Positions 27,034-42,447 of a stretch of 64,000 nucleotides of DNA are shown here, in pieces. Origin of the DNA: Ophelia neglecta. Lineage: Eukaryota. A program made the translations under genes and the position numbers. The notes beneath the pieces are model-generated. The model did not search any database. It worked only from the letters and a program-made list of their open reading frames with translations, and was not told where the DNA came from. Positions within the stretch are counted from its first letter, which is position 1. Every line of letters begins with the position of its first letter. Location: assembly GCA_965285935.1 (NCBI GenBank), contig OZ260662.1:89032001-89096000 (forward strand). Reading direction: 5' to 3'.

Positions 27034-29554
27034 GTTCCGGTTGTTAAGGTTTAATACTTCTGTTAGACTATTCTATTATGTGGCTGGCTCGACGGGCGAA
27101 TGCAAACTAATTTCTTTTTTCTGTGTTTCTGAATTACAAATAGGATTGATAGATATTCATATGCATACCTGTGCAATTATTATTAGCGCATAAAATGTAA
27201 GAATAAAAGTTATTCGATACTATTAGTTTTCTTTGTTATCATGAAGATAATGACTTTAATTTTGTTCCAGTACAAGTTTAATGACCACGGTTTAACTTGC
27301 CCAAGAAGAGAATAATTCCGGGGTGACTGGACTAAGAATGTGACGGTGACCGTTACTTGTCGTTTTAGAGGGGCATTTAAAGAACACAAAAATCCCAGGA
27401 AAAAAGTTACTTTACGTTGAACGTGAAATTAATTATTTTCCCATTAAAATGAGCTTATTAACGTGTCACCAACACCCAGCAGAAGGCTGCACCTATTTGA
27501 AGACCTTCGTAAGCCTATATGTAAACACTCTTTTCACTGGAATTCGGGATCTTTTATGATCTAACACATTTCGGTCAACAGCCGACAAACAAAGGCATCG
27601 GTCGCAGTTTGAAGGAATTAAATATTTTCATTTGACCTACTTCCGTTCGGTGAACACCAATCACTCTGCATACCCTGGATGTAAAGCAGATAGTACATAA
27701 TCTGTTTTCGTACTTTTTGTTTCTACTCAGGATGTCATTCCTCTGATTAACCGAGAGAAAAAAATAGTCAGCAATTCATAACATATACATTTGACCTCTC
27801 GATGGGATTTGAACTCTCGAGGCGGCGTGTCCTGTTCGTGGTTGACCCCTGAGAAGGCTTTGTGAATTTGTGATGGTCACGTGTGCTATTTTATACTCGC
27901 AAATATCAATGCAAAATGTTCTATATGCTGAAAATAAGTATTATAATGTTGTTTGCTCTTCGGACAATTTTGTTTACTTTGTGAAACTTTGGTTATATTA
28001 AGTGGCATGAGAATGGAAGAAATGTTGATTCAAGTTCTTTCAGGGCCTGTGTTTAAACGTTTACAGTCAATGCACTCTATAGTCCGCGTGCATTCTTGTT
28101 TATTGATATAAACTTAATGACAATAATATATTCCTTTGAAAACTATTATATAGAGTTATATAATCATTCATAGAACATCCGTCTGCTATCGAAGAAAGGC
28201 AGCGATGCTTTTGTTATCAATATTTACTGTTAAACTAAAAGTCATACGTTCCATTTATGCTTGTTTTGCGGCAGTTGATGATGGTTAAAATAATTCTTAG
28301 TGTATATGTTTACACTTTGAGCAATGCAGTAAACAGTAGCTTATTTTTGAAGTATTCCGAAGGTATTTTTTTATTAACATGCAATTAATTTTTTTAAATA
28401 ATTTTGAAACGCATCATTGTTGTTAATTGTCTGAATCATTATTCGGCTCGTACGTGGCCGTTATCATATTAGAAAATAAAAACAAAAAGAAATTTAAAAT
28501 ATCAAAAGGGCCTGTGCCTAAATATATATCACAACATTGTGTAAAAAGTATTATTATATATGCACTTTGAAATAAACTAGTATTTTAATTAAGCATATGC
28601 CAATGCTTGTTATCTCTTTTAGATTGACCAGTTTAAGGAGCTGGGGCGATAGCTTATATACTGTATCGCCAAAAAATACAGCCTTGCTACATTCTACATA
28701 TAAAGAGACAAAACAAGTCCGGTGAGAATCAATTGTCGGCCGTAACATCAGCAATCAATTAACTTAGACCGAAAGATGTTTGCTAATAGCAAAATAATTC
28801 AACGTATTAATACAAATGTGAAAATGTTTCATGGTTAATTAATTGTATCGTATTAAAGCATACTTTTTTTTAAAAACTTGTGTGTATGTATACCTTGAAC
28901 AAAAAACATGCTAGGAATAGTTTCTGGATGACATGATAAATTGCCATATTGAAATTCTACCTGCGTGTAGGATATGGCCATGCCATGAATTTTCAAGAAA
29001 TGGTACATTGTGCGAAAAGCAGGTTGAGTATATTTTGCAGATTTGTTTGATCCTTATGTAAGTGTTTGCGGTCGTTACCTCAAACACAAATTACCTATAG
29101 GGGGTATTATTTTATTTTCTCGGGACAATGGTGTGCTTTCGACCTCAAGTATCAAGTAGTTTATGTGCATTTTGTGGTTAAGATATAATACAAAAATGGT
29201 AATGTTTCATGCTTTTAAATCTGTTAGTTTTTTTCTCTTGAATATGGCCCTCTTAAATAGGACCAAAGATAGTTTAATAATTCCATGAATTGAAGCTTGA
29301 AACATACTACGTCCCAGATCTAAGCCCCTTCGTGGAGATTAAATATGACAGAGCTCATAAAAACGATGCTTATCAAGACGGCCTAACCTGATGAGACACA
29401 AACTTCCAGAGGCGTAGGAAGGAAAATCAAAGTGAGGAGGCCAACTTTACATCAGCGTCATAAAAAGGGGGGGGGGGGGCAAAACATATGATGCCCCTGG
29501 GGGGGGGATGCCCCCAACCCCCCCCCCCCCCCGCTTCCGACGCCACTGTAAATT

Positions 29555-29923
29555 TCTTTTATCTATTTATTAAATATCTTACATTTTATCTTACTTTACT
29601 AACACTTTTTAGTCAAAAAAACATCTGACCCATCCACCTAGAATTTTTTTTATAAAATAGAGCTCAATAACCGCTTATTTCTTACTATTATCCCCATGTA
29701 AATAAAAATAGACAGTACAATAAACGATTAACTATACACAACTTAAGACACTAAATGGCCCACATGGTGTCTATGTGTGGTTAAGCCCCAAAAATCCAAA
29801 TCCACTATTATCCCCATGTAAATAAAAATAGACAGTACAATAAACGATTAACTATACACAACTTAAGACACTAAATGGCCCACATGGTGTCTATGTGTGG
29901 TTAAGCCCCAAAAATCCAAATCC
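29555..29923 (+). mobile_element. 5'-truncated I-group LINE 3'UTR, with its last 120 bp present twice in tandem
   Basis: Homologous to ~30442-30694. Identical 120-bp units at 29684-29803 and 29804-29923, each ending in an aaatccaaatcc tail. Confidence 0.85.
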
Positions 29924-29982
29924 ACTGTAATTTGATCTTTACATGCCAAAAAACATTGAATAAATTCAATTATTGGCCATGT

Positions 29983-30694
29983 CAATCCCGTCTTCTGACT
30001 ACAAGAGCCCGATAAACCAGTATGGCTGCAAACAATGGCAAACCGCCTGGGACCAAGTCATAGAAAACAAACTGCACTCTGTCTGGCCCACCATACCAAA
30101 ATCATTTCGAAAGCCACTTGCTTCCCGGAGAGACGATTTGATCATGTCTCGTCTGCGCATCGGCCACTCTCATTTTACACATACTCATCTTCTGAGAAGA
30201 GAGGACCCACCTTTTTGTGAGGGCTGCCAATGCCAGATTACCATCCAACACATTCTGCTGGAGTGTAGCGATTTCGCCGAGGCTACATACCGTTTTTATA
30301 ACGTTAACAGCCTCAAAACCTTATTCGACAAGGTCTGCCCACAGCAGATCCTTAATTTCTTAAAATCTATAGATCTCTACTACAAAATGTAATAGACATT
30401 AAACGTAGAAACCATTTTAAAAATGCGAAAGTTTAAGGAACTTTCTTTTATCTATTTATTAAACAACTAACCTTTTATGTTCCTCTACTAACACTCTATA
30501 TTCAGAAAAACATCTGACCCATCCACCTAGAAGATTTTTTCATAAAATAGAGCTCAGTAAACCGCTTATTTCTTACTATTATCCCCATGTAAATAAAAAT
30601 AGACAGTACAATAAACGATTAACTATACCCAACTTAAGACACTAAATGGCCCACCTGGTGTCTATGTGTCGTTAAGCCCCAAAAATCCAAATCC
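29983..30694 (+). mobile_element. 5'-truncated I-group (I/Nimb-like) LINE: ORF2 C-terminus, 3'UTR and (AAATCC)2 tail
   Basis: ORF to 30392 has SRLRIGHSHFTH..PPFCEGC..TIQHILLEC (C-terminal zinc knuckle). Flanked by a 58/59-bp direct repeat (29924-29982 and 30695-30752). Confidence 0.88.
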
Positions 30695-31009
30695 ACTGTA
30701 AATTGATCTTTACATGCCAAAAAAATTGAATAAATTCAATTATTGGCCATGTAATGTGTTTGTAAATAACCTGCCCACAGGTAACTATATGATTATGGTC
30801 AAGCCAACTGAGGAGAGACGCTTCTGACCAATGCTGCATTACACCATTTTGAGAGAGCAAAAAGTGAGAGGGTCATCATTACAAAGTAGGGGGGGGGGGG
30901 GCAAAACATATGATGGCCCCCCACATTTTTAGTGGGGGGGGGGCATGGACCCCCCCCCCCCCCGGCCCCCCCGCTTCCTACGCCACTGACTTCTCCATAA
31001 GTTGGAGCA

Positions 31010-31800
31010 GTATAAGGCATGTACCAAACTCATTCTGTTTTATGGTGCCGAAATTTGGGGGTATGAGGCATCAGTAAACTTAAACAGGAGTTTCCTCAGG
31101 AGGTACCTGAAACTTAAAAGGTGTCCACCGACCAATATCCTGCTGTTAGAGGTAGGGGTCCTACCACTGTCGGTTAAGAGACATCGCAGGGTGTTGAACT
31201 TCCGGGCTAGTATCCTAGATATTAGAAGCGAGAAAAAACTTTAGCAAAATTGCCTTTGATAAAAACCAAATATTACAAAAGCAATGCTTGGTCGAAAGAA
31301 GACGTCAAAATTCTGAAAGAGTACAATATAATCGACTATTGGCAGCCGCAGTTAAGATGTAAAATCCAAAGAGCGGTCCAATCAGGAGTTTAGTGCCATT
31401 GATAGTATGCTGAAATGTTTTTGAAAATTGTAACAATTCGTCAAAACATGCTCGGTAGCAAGACTACCCTGTTAATATCCCATGGTGCGTCGGTGCTTGG
31501 CATCTTGGGGAAAGGAATGCCACGGAGTTAACCAGCTACAGACTTCGAAACTGTTTCATTGCTATGGAGACGGTCACGTGGAAGTCAGCCTCACCGATAG
31601 ACGGCAATAGTGTGAAGTATGCGGCGAGTTAGATGACGATCTGGACTACATGCTTGAGGGCACACATTTCAATGAATTCAGGAAAAACCTAATCGACCCT
31701 TACTGTTAGAGGGAAGCGACACCATCTAAGCCGAGAAAACTATTCATCAGTTAACCCACGCAAGCACTTAACAACATTGTACGTTATATCCGAAAGATTG
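31010..31800 (+). mobile_element. Degenerate LINE ORF2 C-terminal remnant
   Basis: ILFYGAEIWGYE..FLRRYLKLKR..TNILLLEVG.LPL, later YRLRN..IAMET..CEVC..YMLE..HF..FRK, with several stops. Confidence 0.7.
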
Positions 31801-42028: not shown

Positions 42029-42447
42029 AGTAGGCGAAGGAGGTAAAGTCAAAGTGAGGGGGCCAACTTTACATCGGCGGCATAAAAGGCGGGGGGGGGG
42101 GGGGCAAAAACTATAATGCCCCCCCCCCGCCGCCCCCCCCCCCCCGCTTCGTATGCATTGTACATTGATTTTTACATGCTAAAAAACATTGAATAAATTC
42201 AATTATTGGGTATTGGGTATGTAATTGGTTTGTAAATAACCTGCCCACAGGTAACTATATGATTATGGTCAAGCCAACTGAGGACAGACGCTTCTGACCA
42301 CTGCTGCATTGCACCATTTTGAGAGGGAAAAAAGTAAGAGGGTCATCATTAAGAAGTGGGGGGGGGGGGGGCAACAAATATGATGGCCCCCCATTTTTTG
42401 AAGTGGGGGGGGGGGCATGTCCCCCCCCCCCGCTTCCTACGCCACTG
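42029..42447. mobile_element. Uninterrupted copy of the 29407-30988 MITE family
   Basis: Colinear homology (aaagtgagg.ggccaactttacatc; acctgcccacaggtaactatatgattatggtcaagcc; cttcctacgccactg end). Probable TSD catta/cacta with 1 mismatch. Confidence 0.85.

What the first reader, a model, noticed from the sequence alone, without database searches (positions are those of the whole stretch)
29407..30988. A LINE repeatedly inserting at the same nucleotide of a MITE, with a tail that recreates its target
Seen: compared with the empty MITE at 42029-42447, this copy has three LINE 3' ends, each ending AAATCCAAATCC and each followed immediately by ACT (29804, 29924, 30695). The original MITE site is CGCC|ACTGTAAATT at an internal TIR-like motif (29545). 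Insertion A (29555-29803) has a ~10-bp TSD. Insertion C (29983-30694) has a 58/59-bp TSD starting at the same base. A and C differ by many substitutions in the shared 3'UTR, so they are independent events. Known: TPRT joins the 3' tail to the first-strand nick, and some LINEs target DNA transposons (Tx1 in Xenopus), but I-group LINEs are not generally known for this. Inference: a sequence-specific I/Nimb-like LINE targets CC|ACTG of this MITE family. Because its tail ends in CC, each insertion rebuilds CC|ACTG and invites stacking, making it a hyper-parasite that could hitchhike with the MITE.
Basis: partly seen in the sequence, partly recalled or inferred. Interest (0 to 1): 0.75.

Follow-up and report, generated by a model that had tools for sequence, protein, structure and literature searches.

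The report
Stacked LINE ends, not MITE-targeted
Two separate broken copies of a common jumping gene, plus a local duplicate of one of them, are joined at the same base inside one small transposon, but genome-wide this jumping gene does not aim at that transposon, so the case is fairly ordinary.

Summary
Three LINE 3' ends (A 29555-29803, B 29804-29923, C 29983-30694) each end in AAATCCAAATCC followed by ACT, inside a MITE-like element with a 59/58-bp repeat around C.

The main inference fails. The genome has 3289 such tails. Only 10 are followed by ACT, and 3 of those are this locus. At least 490 other MITE copies carry the same internal site, and none is occupied. None of 70 sampled tail flanks lies in the MITE.

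A and C are independent copies, because each has dozens of closer relatives elsewhere. B is a copy of A: it is 120/120 identical and shares a haplotype found nowhere else.

The LINE (APE endonuclease, RT, RNase H; full copy 5.7 kb) makes 8-16-bp TSDs. 21 of 28 TSDs start with TCC, CC or a similar suffix of its own tail unit. Its 3' ends pile up head-to-tail: 16 of 95 tails have a same-strand LINE piece within 60 bp, against 1 opposite-strand piece.

Best reading: this family primes by tail microhomology and so re-uses one nick. The MITE is incidental. Reads could not test the assembly. Two earlier scan notes have similar titles (s1-740116, s1-735162); I did not check them.

The parts
29402..29406 (.). 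5-bp flanking repeat ACTTC of the MITE (left copy)
   Evidence: the same 5 bp recur at 30989-30993. Other copies also have 5-bp repeats.
29407..29542 (+). MITE left arm, with an internal second copy of the 3' terminal module (...CGCTTCCGACG)
   Evidence: (D5, I10)
29543..29554 (+). First copy of the target, CCACTGTAAATT (upstream TSD copy of insertion A)
   Evidence: it falls in the CC-start class of family TSDs.
29555..29803 (+). Insertion A: a 249-bp 5'-truncated LINE 3' UTR and tail
   Evidence: At least 39 other genomic copies are closer to its first 129 bp than C is.
29804..29923 (+). B: a 120-bp tandem duplicate of the end of A, with ACT microhomology at both unit borders
   Evidence: 100% identity to A. 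The 59-nt A/B haplotype occurs only twice in the genome, with no match at 1 mismatch.
29924..29982 (+). Middle copy of the target (59 bp): downstream TSD copy of A and upstream TSD copy of C
   Evidence: D6
29983..30694 (+). Insertion C: a 712-bp 5'-truncated LINE, comprising the last 136 codons of ORF2 (to the stop codon at 30390-30392), the 3' UTR and the tail
   Evidence: 39 other copies are closer to its 30446-30574 than A is.
30695..30752 (+). Third copy of the target (58 bp), downstream TSD copy of C
30753..30988 (+). MITE right arm, ending CGCTTCCTACGCCACTG
   Evidence: positive control
30989..30993 (.). 5-bp flanking repeat ACTTC of the MITE (right copy)
42029..42447 (+). Second, uninterrupted but diverged copy of the same MITE family

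Best explanation
An abundant LINE that is not site-specific (APE endonuclease, RT and RNase H in ORF2, CCHC ORF1, short (AAATCC)n tail) was joined twice, independently, to the same bottom-strand nick position (CG|CCACTG) in one copy of a MITE. Later, the last 120 bp of the first-listed copy (A) was duplicated in tandem to give B. The shared position does not reflect recognition of the MITE. This family starts reverse transcription on a 3'-OH whose last 1-6 bases pair with the UCC end of its tail repeat. As a result, a site that has been used once is likely to be used again. My preferred route is that C was primed in or at the tail of A, where complementarity is longest, which leaves the tail/flank border unchanged. 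The alternative route is that the nick regenerated in the upstream target copy was used again. Shown here: the lack of specificity, the independence of A and C, the derivation of B from A, the microhomology at TSD starts, and the family-wide head-to-tail piling. Inferred: the order of events and the priming route.
For: No specificity:
- The genome has 3289 tails. Only 10 read tail+ACT, and 3 of those are this locus. The 7 others have unrelated flanks.
- Of 13 near-matches to the tail-MITE junction, only the 2 in this window are real. There are 490 unoccupied copies of the site.
- 70 sampled tails have heterogeneous flanks, and none lies in the MITE, with a working positive control.

Independence of A and C:
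- 39 other copies are 91-94% identical to the first 129 bp of A, and C is not among the top 40.
- The reverse holds for C.
- The first 102 nt shared by A and C are 86% identical, against 57 of 59 columns for the flanking repeat.

B comes from A:
- B is 120/120 identical to the end of A.
- Their shared 59-nt haplotype is unique, with 0 copies at 1 mismatch and 19 at 2.

Priming habit:
- 28 of 55 mapped 5' junctions have an exact TSD of at least 8 bp. Mismatched-pair controls average 5.4.
- TSD lengths are 8-16 bp.
- 21 of 28 begin with TCC, CC, ATCC, AATCC, AAATCC or C.

Piling:
- 16 of 95 tails have a same-strand LINE piece within 60 bp downstream, against 1 opposite-strand piece.
- In 6 stacks the partners are not each other's nearest relatives.

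Analogues in print:
- The first nucleotide of TSDs correlates with microsatellite-like tails in RTE-related elements (PMC6007223, abstract).
Against: - The order of A and C cannot be told. Both orders give the same structure, and both copies are 6-7% from their nearest relatives.
- Most direct stacks in the sample show no flank letters between the old tail and the new 5' end. That fits template jumping within one event as well as priming inside an old tail.
- Clear same-nick doubles with a TSD between the two pieces are rare in the sample. L019 is one candidate, too short to tell from a duplication. L088 and L103 turned out to be local duplications.
- C's 58-60-bp duplication is far outside the 8-16 bp seen elsewhere.
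- The sample comes only from the first 9.7 Mb of one contig, and 29 of its 70 tails lie in a dense 0.42-Mb subterminal stretch.
- The structure was not confirmed by reads.
Confidence: 0.6

Rival explanations
1. One compound retrotransposition event. Reverse transcription of the C RNA at the nick was followed by template switches onto the target overhang and then onto a second LINE RNA (A). Both copies would then have arrived together at one nick.
For: R2 proteins extend products by jumping from finished cDNA to further 3' UTR RNA molecules, and head-to-tail repeats have been ascribed to tandem template copying (PMC11371274, passages). Direct stacks without intervening flank are common in this family. 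A and C appear similarly old.
Against: This needs at least three ordered switches (RNA to target DNA, DNA to RNA, RNA to target DNA again) plus a matching second-strand nick. The 12-bp and 58-60-bp target copies look like two ordinary staggered cuts. There is no direct evidence for this enzyme.
Confidence: 0.15
2. The native site was re-used. C inserted first with a long duplication that regenerated the whole original site upstream, and A later hit that regenerated native site. The old tail played no role.
For: The structure is equally compatible with this order. The upstream 59-bp copy preserves the full original context.
Against: The native site is not hot, because none of at least 490 other copies is occupied. 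By my own rough estimate, not computed in any call, about 3300 insertions on 10 to 100 million CC/TCC sites would give well under one chance double hit per genome.
Confidence: 0.12
3. One reading: a sequence-specific LINE that recognises CC|ACTG of this MITE family and stacks because its tail rebuilds that site.
For: Three tails are followed by ACT at one site. A and C are independent copies.
Against: Searches show no enrichment of ACT or ACTG, no other occupied MITE copy, and no sampled flank in the MITE. B is a duplicate.
Confidence: 0.03
4. The whole A-B-C arrangement is an assembly artefact, or arose by segmental duplication of a single insertion.
For: B is a perfect 120-bp tandem copy. 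Look-alike structures elsewhere (L088, L103) are duplications. No read or contig spanning the structure was seen.
Against: A and C differ in 5' truncation point and in sequence, with dozens of closer relatives elsewhere. C holds 463 bp that A lacks. The two long target copies differ at 2 columns, which collapse or duplication artefacts would not produce.
Confidence: 0.05

Closest known systems
LINE/SINE families with microsatellite-like tails whose TSD start matches the tail (RTE-related retroposons; PMC6007223, abstract read)
   Same: Short tandem-repeat tail. The first bases of the TSD correlate with the tail repeat, which implies that tail-primer pairing helps choose or use the nick.
   Different: This element carries RNase H and a CCHC ORF1, so it is not RTE-like. 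The thymine-stretch signature of RTE was not looked for.
[quoted passage not shown]
   Same: A new copy lands at the border of a tract that matches its own tail, in the same orientation, so many insertions share one apparent nucleotide.
   Different: There the tract is poly(A) and the data are thousands of events. Here the tract is a 12-18-nt (AAATCC)n tail and the evidence is one locus plus a sample of 95 tails.
Target-specific LINEs such as Tx1-type elements in other transposons or snRNA genes, and R1/R2 in rDNA (recalled; an earlier scan note on a U5-specific LINE in this genome was seen by title only)
   Same: Repeated insertion at one nucleotide of a repeated host sequence.
   Different: In those families nearly all copies share the target. 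Here only this locus among 3289 tails does.
Template jumping by LINE reverse transcriptases giving head-to-tail products (PMC11371274, passages read)
   Same: Head-to-tail 3' ends without target sequence between them, as in L018, L027 and L097.
   Different: It does not by itself place a 58-bp target copy between B and C.

Membership tests
Target-specific LINE | Most copies are flanked by the same target sequence | tested here: not met
   70 sampled flanks are heterogeneous. Only 10 tail+ACT occur in the genome, 3 of them at this locus.
Target-specific LINE | Many copies of the target family are occupied at the same position | tested here: not met
   Of 13 near-matches to the junction, only the 2 in this window are real. 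490 copies of the site are unoccupied. None of 70 flanks lies in the MITE.
RNase H-bearing APE-type LINE (I / Nimb-like group; the group's definition is recalled) | N-terminal APE-type endonuclease and a reverse transcriptase in ORF2 | tested here: met
   Exo_endo_phos_2 at 3.2e-24 and RVT_1 at 1.3e-34 on L106:2570-5101.
RNase H-bearing APE-type LINE (I / Nimb-like group; the group's definition is recalled) | RNase H domain downstream of the RT | tested here: met
   PF00075 at 1.2e-12 on L015:44-1222.
RNase H-bearing APE-type LINE (I / Nimb-like group; the group's definition is recalled) | ORF1 with CCHC zinc knuckles | tested here: met
   Two CX2CX4HX4C motifs at ORF1 residues 227 and 246, and a third looser one read by eye in the printed sequence.
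RNase H-bearing APE-type LINE (I / Nimb-like group; the group's definition is recalled) | RT groups with reference I or Nimb elements in a tree | not tested
   No reference set was fetched. Whether it is I, Nimb or another clade stays open.
MITE (short non-autonomous TIR transposon) | Terminal inverted repeats, a flanking target duplication, many short non-coding copies | tested here: met
   15-nt TIR at 93% (I10). 5-bp flanking repeats in the window copy and in L044, L045, L046, L050 and L055. 490 copies of the internal site. Copies are about 430-470 bp. The superfamily was not determined.
TPRT with tail-target microhomology | Frequent 5' truncation, variable TSDs, and TSD starts that match the tail unit | tested here: met
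   Fragment lengths run from 24 bp to full length. TSDs are 8-16 bp, and 21 of 28 start with a suffix of AAATCC. Control: 5.4 chance repeats of at least 8 bp against 28 observed.

The most novel reading that the evidence does not exclude
The (AAATCC)n tail may act as a self-renewing landing pad. Each insertion would leave a better primer-pairing site than it found, so the family builds oriented head-to-tail arrays. That could include the dense pile-up at the start of contig C1, where 30 tails lie in 0.42 Mb and 28 are on one strand with 5' ends pointing to the contig end. That pile-up could reflect priming on chromosome ends or on broken DNA.
Probability: 0.15. Interest if true: 0.5.

Novelty: new member of a known kind. 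Interest (0 to 1): 0.25.

Why it matters
It removes a tempting claim, that a LINE hyper-parasitises a MITE, by a direct genome-wide test. In its place it gives a documented priming habit of one abundant invertebrate LINE family: TSDs that begin with the end of the tail unit, and strongly oriented stacking of 3' ends. It is also a caution for TE annotation. 'Same-nucleotide' double insertions can come from nick or tail re-use or from small duplications (B here; L088 and L103 elsewhere) without any target recognition.

Tried and rejected
- **Deriving A from C by local duplication:** rejected. It needs a 770-bp duplication plus a precise 511-bp deletion, and it does not fit the closer relatives found elsewhere.
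- **B as a third retrotransposition hit:** rejected.
- **L088, L103 and L019 as independent parallels of the window's structure:** L088 and L103 proved to be duplications. In L088 the two pieces share the same 5' start and rare variants, and the paralogue L091 has a single copy. L019 is too short to decide.
- **Age ordering of A and C from identity to nearest relatives:** uninformative, at 94% against 93%.
- **Read support:** only short contigs of one sample were available, and no piece spans the structure. One 67-letter contig lies on 30693-30747 from its letter 13 on, which is too little on the left side to count as bridging.
- **Tail length:** only 1 copy in the genome has four full units.
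- **Hebe paper (PMC2861651):** its passages did not bear on the question.
- **Not done:** I did not classify the LINE below 'APE + RT + RNase H', did not determine the MITE superfamily, did not try to identify the organism, and did not search whether this LINE family is already described. The three paper searches were about mechanism.
- **Earlier scan notes:** seen by title or summary lines only, and not tested.
Full report
**What is there**

Window 29407-30988 is one copy of a short TIR element. Its ends are CAGAGGCGTAGGAAG...CTTCCTACGCCACTG, a 15-nt inverted repeat at 93% (I10). It is flanked by ACTTC on both sides. It is interrupted after an internal second copy of its own 3' module.

The interruption holds three 3' ends of one LINE, all on the + strand. 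Each ends in AAGCCCCAAAAATCCAAATCC, at 29783, 29903 and 30674 (0.01 expected from shuffles).
- A is 29555-29803.
- B is 29804-29923.
- C is 29983-30694. It still encodes the last 136 codons of ORF2.

Target sequence appears three times:
- CCACTGTAAATT before A.
- A 59-bp copy between B and C.
- A 58-bp copy after C. The 59-bp and 58-bp copies differ by one substitution and one single-base gap.

The window's genome (G000, 762 Mb) has 3289 matches to the 21-letter tail at up to one mismatch.
- Exactly 10 read tail+ACT, and 3 of them are this locus. The other 7 have unrelated flanks, none in the MITE.
- The tail-MITE junction, at up to 2 mismatches, has 13 matches. 11 of them are chance matches with no LINE upstream and no MITE downstream. 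The reversed-pattern control gave 6.
- The uninterrupted site has 490 matches at up to 2 mismatches.
- I fetched 72 of the first 100 listed tail places, all on contig C1 between 0.03 and 9.7 Mb. After dropping 2 whose 101-bp surroundings were identical to another's, 70 distinct tails remained.
- The flanks of these 70 are heterogeneous, and none begins with ACT. None matches the MITE apart from one G-run match, while the window's own flank matches 7 of 7 MITE copies.

The LINE does not target this MITE or ACTG.

**How many events**

- The first 129 bp of A has 39 other genomic copies at 91-94% identity, and C is not among the 40 best.
- The matching part of C has 39 others at 89-93%, and A is not among them.
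- A and C also differ in truncation point.
- They are 86% alike over the first 102 shared nt, while the long target copies agree at 57 of 59 columns.

So A and C are independent copies.

B is different. It is 120/120 identical to the end of A. The 59-nt A/B haplotype occurs twice in the genome, with no copy at one mismatch and 19 at two. The unit is bordered by ACT on both sides. B is therefore a tandem duplicate of A or, less likely, a second pass over the same RNA. It is not a third hit.

**The LINE**

A natural full-length copy (G000:C1, about 354094-359778, 5.7 kb, TSD CACGCAAACAGG) has two open frames.
- ORF1 is an open frame of 472 codons with CCHC knuckles.
- ORF2 is an open frame of 1237 codons with an APE-type endonuclease, RT and RNase H.

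I did not place it in a tree.

**How it lands**

- In the unbiased sample, 55 fragments have their 5' junction inside the fetched locus.
- 28 of these have an exact flanking repeat of at least 8 bp, and 22 have one of at least 10 bp. Mismatched pairs average 5.4 and 2.4 respectively.
- TSD lengths are 8-16 bp.
- 21 of 28 begin with a suffix of the tail unit: TCC 9, CC 5, ATCC 2, AATCC 2, AAATCC 2, C 1. The other 7 do not.

So the nicked strand's 3' end usually pairs with the UCC end of the tail repeat. The window's site then reads CG|CCACTGTAAATT, an ordinary 12-bp TSD of the CC class. The same principle is in print for RTE-related elements (PMC6007223, abstract).

**Piling**

- Of 95 tails, 16 have another LINE piece on the same strand within 60 bp downstream, and 1 has one on the opposite strand.
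- Of 94 tail-reaching fragments, 11 are followed within 60 bp by another tail-reaching fragment. In 7 of these the gap is 5 bp or less.
- In six stacks the partners are not each other's nearest relatives. Their ranks are 22 of 64, 11 of 74, 62 of 77, 78 of 79, 37-38 of 86 and 31 of 87. These are independent copies, not duplications.
- Three look-alikes of the window's exact pattern were examined. L088 and L103 are duplications. L019 is undecidable.

**Mechanism**

The shared nucleotide is best explained by re-use of one nick in a family that depends on tail-primer pairing.
- If A came first, a nick 5' of the last TCC of its tail gives a primer that pairs with the incoming tail. The tail/flank border then stays exactly where it was. 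[quoted passage not shown]
- If C came first, its long duplication regenerated the native site upstream.
- A single compound event with template switches is also possible (PMC11371274, passages).

The structure cannot tell these apart, and both copies look similarly old. I prefer the first route because the native site is unoccupied in at least 490 other copies.

Two things remain unexplained:
- C's 58-60-bp duplication.
- The absence of flank letters between old tail and new 5' end in most direct stacks.

**Limits**

- The sample is from one end of one contig.
- The read check was inconclusive. Only short contigs of a single sample were available, and none spans the structure.
- No supplementary files were consulted.

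**Verdict**

The structure is real and neat. Its striking interpretation, a MITE-targeting hyper-parasite, is refuted, and what remains belongs to a known kind of LINE behaviour.

Noticed in passing
G000:C1:1-420000 (loci L001-L030): The first 30 exact tails listed on contig C1 all lie in its first 0.42 Mb. That is about 71 per Mb, against 4.3 per Mb genome-wide. 28 of the 30 are on the + strand, so their 5' ends point to the contig start. This looks like an oriented subterminal pile-up.
   Followed up: no
window 29407-30988 and 42029-42447; loci L044-L055: The MITE family has 5-bp flanking repeats: ACTTC, CTTTC, CAAGA, GATTA, AAAAG and TACCT, plus one copy with 8 bp. Its ends are CAGAGGCG...CGCCACTG. 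It carries an internal second copy of its roughly 100-bp 3' module, with G-run/C-run palindromes. The superfamily is unknown.
   Followed up: partly
L088 and L091 (G000:C1:7124089-7125109 and 7315684-7316704); L103 (G000:C1:9669605-9671440): These structures mimic two insertions at one nick. They are really local duplications of a LINE end plus its flank, because the pieces share rare variants or the same 5' start.
   Followed up: yes
L020-L023 (G000:C1:387604-390852): Three LINE ends lie 1613 and 1615 bp apart with identical flanks. This is a tandem array of a 1.6-kb unit that contains the LINE end.
   Followed up: no
window 31002-31244 (+): The MITE itself sits in a fragment of another LINE-like ORF (...ILFYGAEIWG...), so the locus is nested three deep.
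   Followed up: no
sampled tails: 9 of 70 tails are followed by AA(A)CCC. This could be a common variant of the last tail unit or a second favoured target start.
   Followed up: no
window 30693-30747: One 67-letter contig of run X3, at near single-copy depth, lies here only from its letter 13 on.
   Followed up: no
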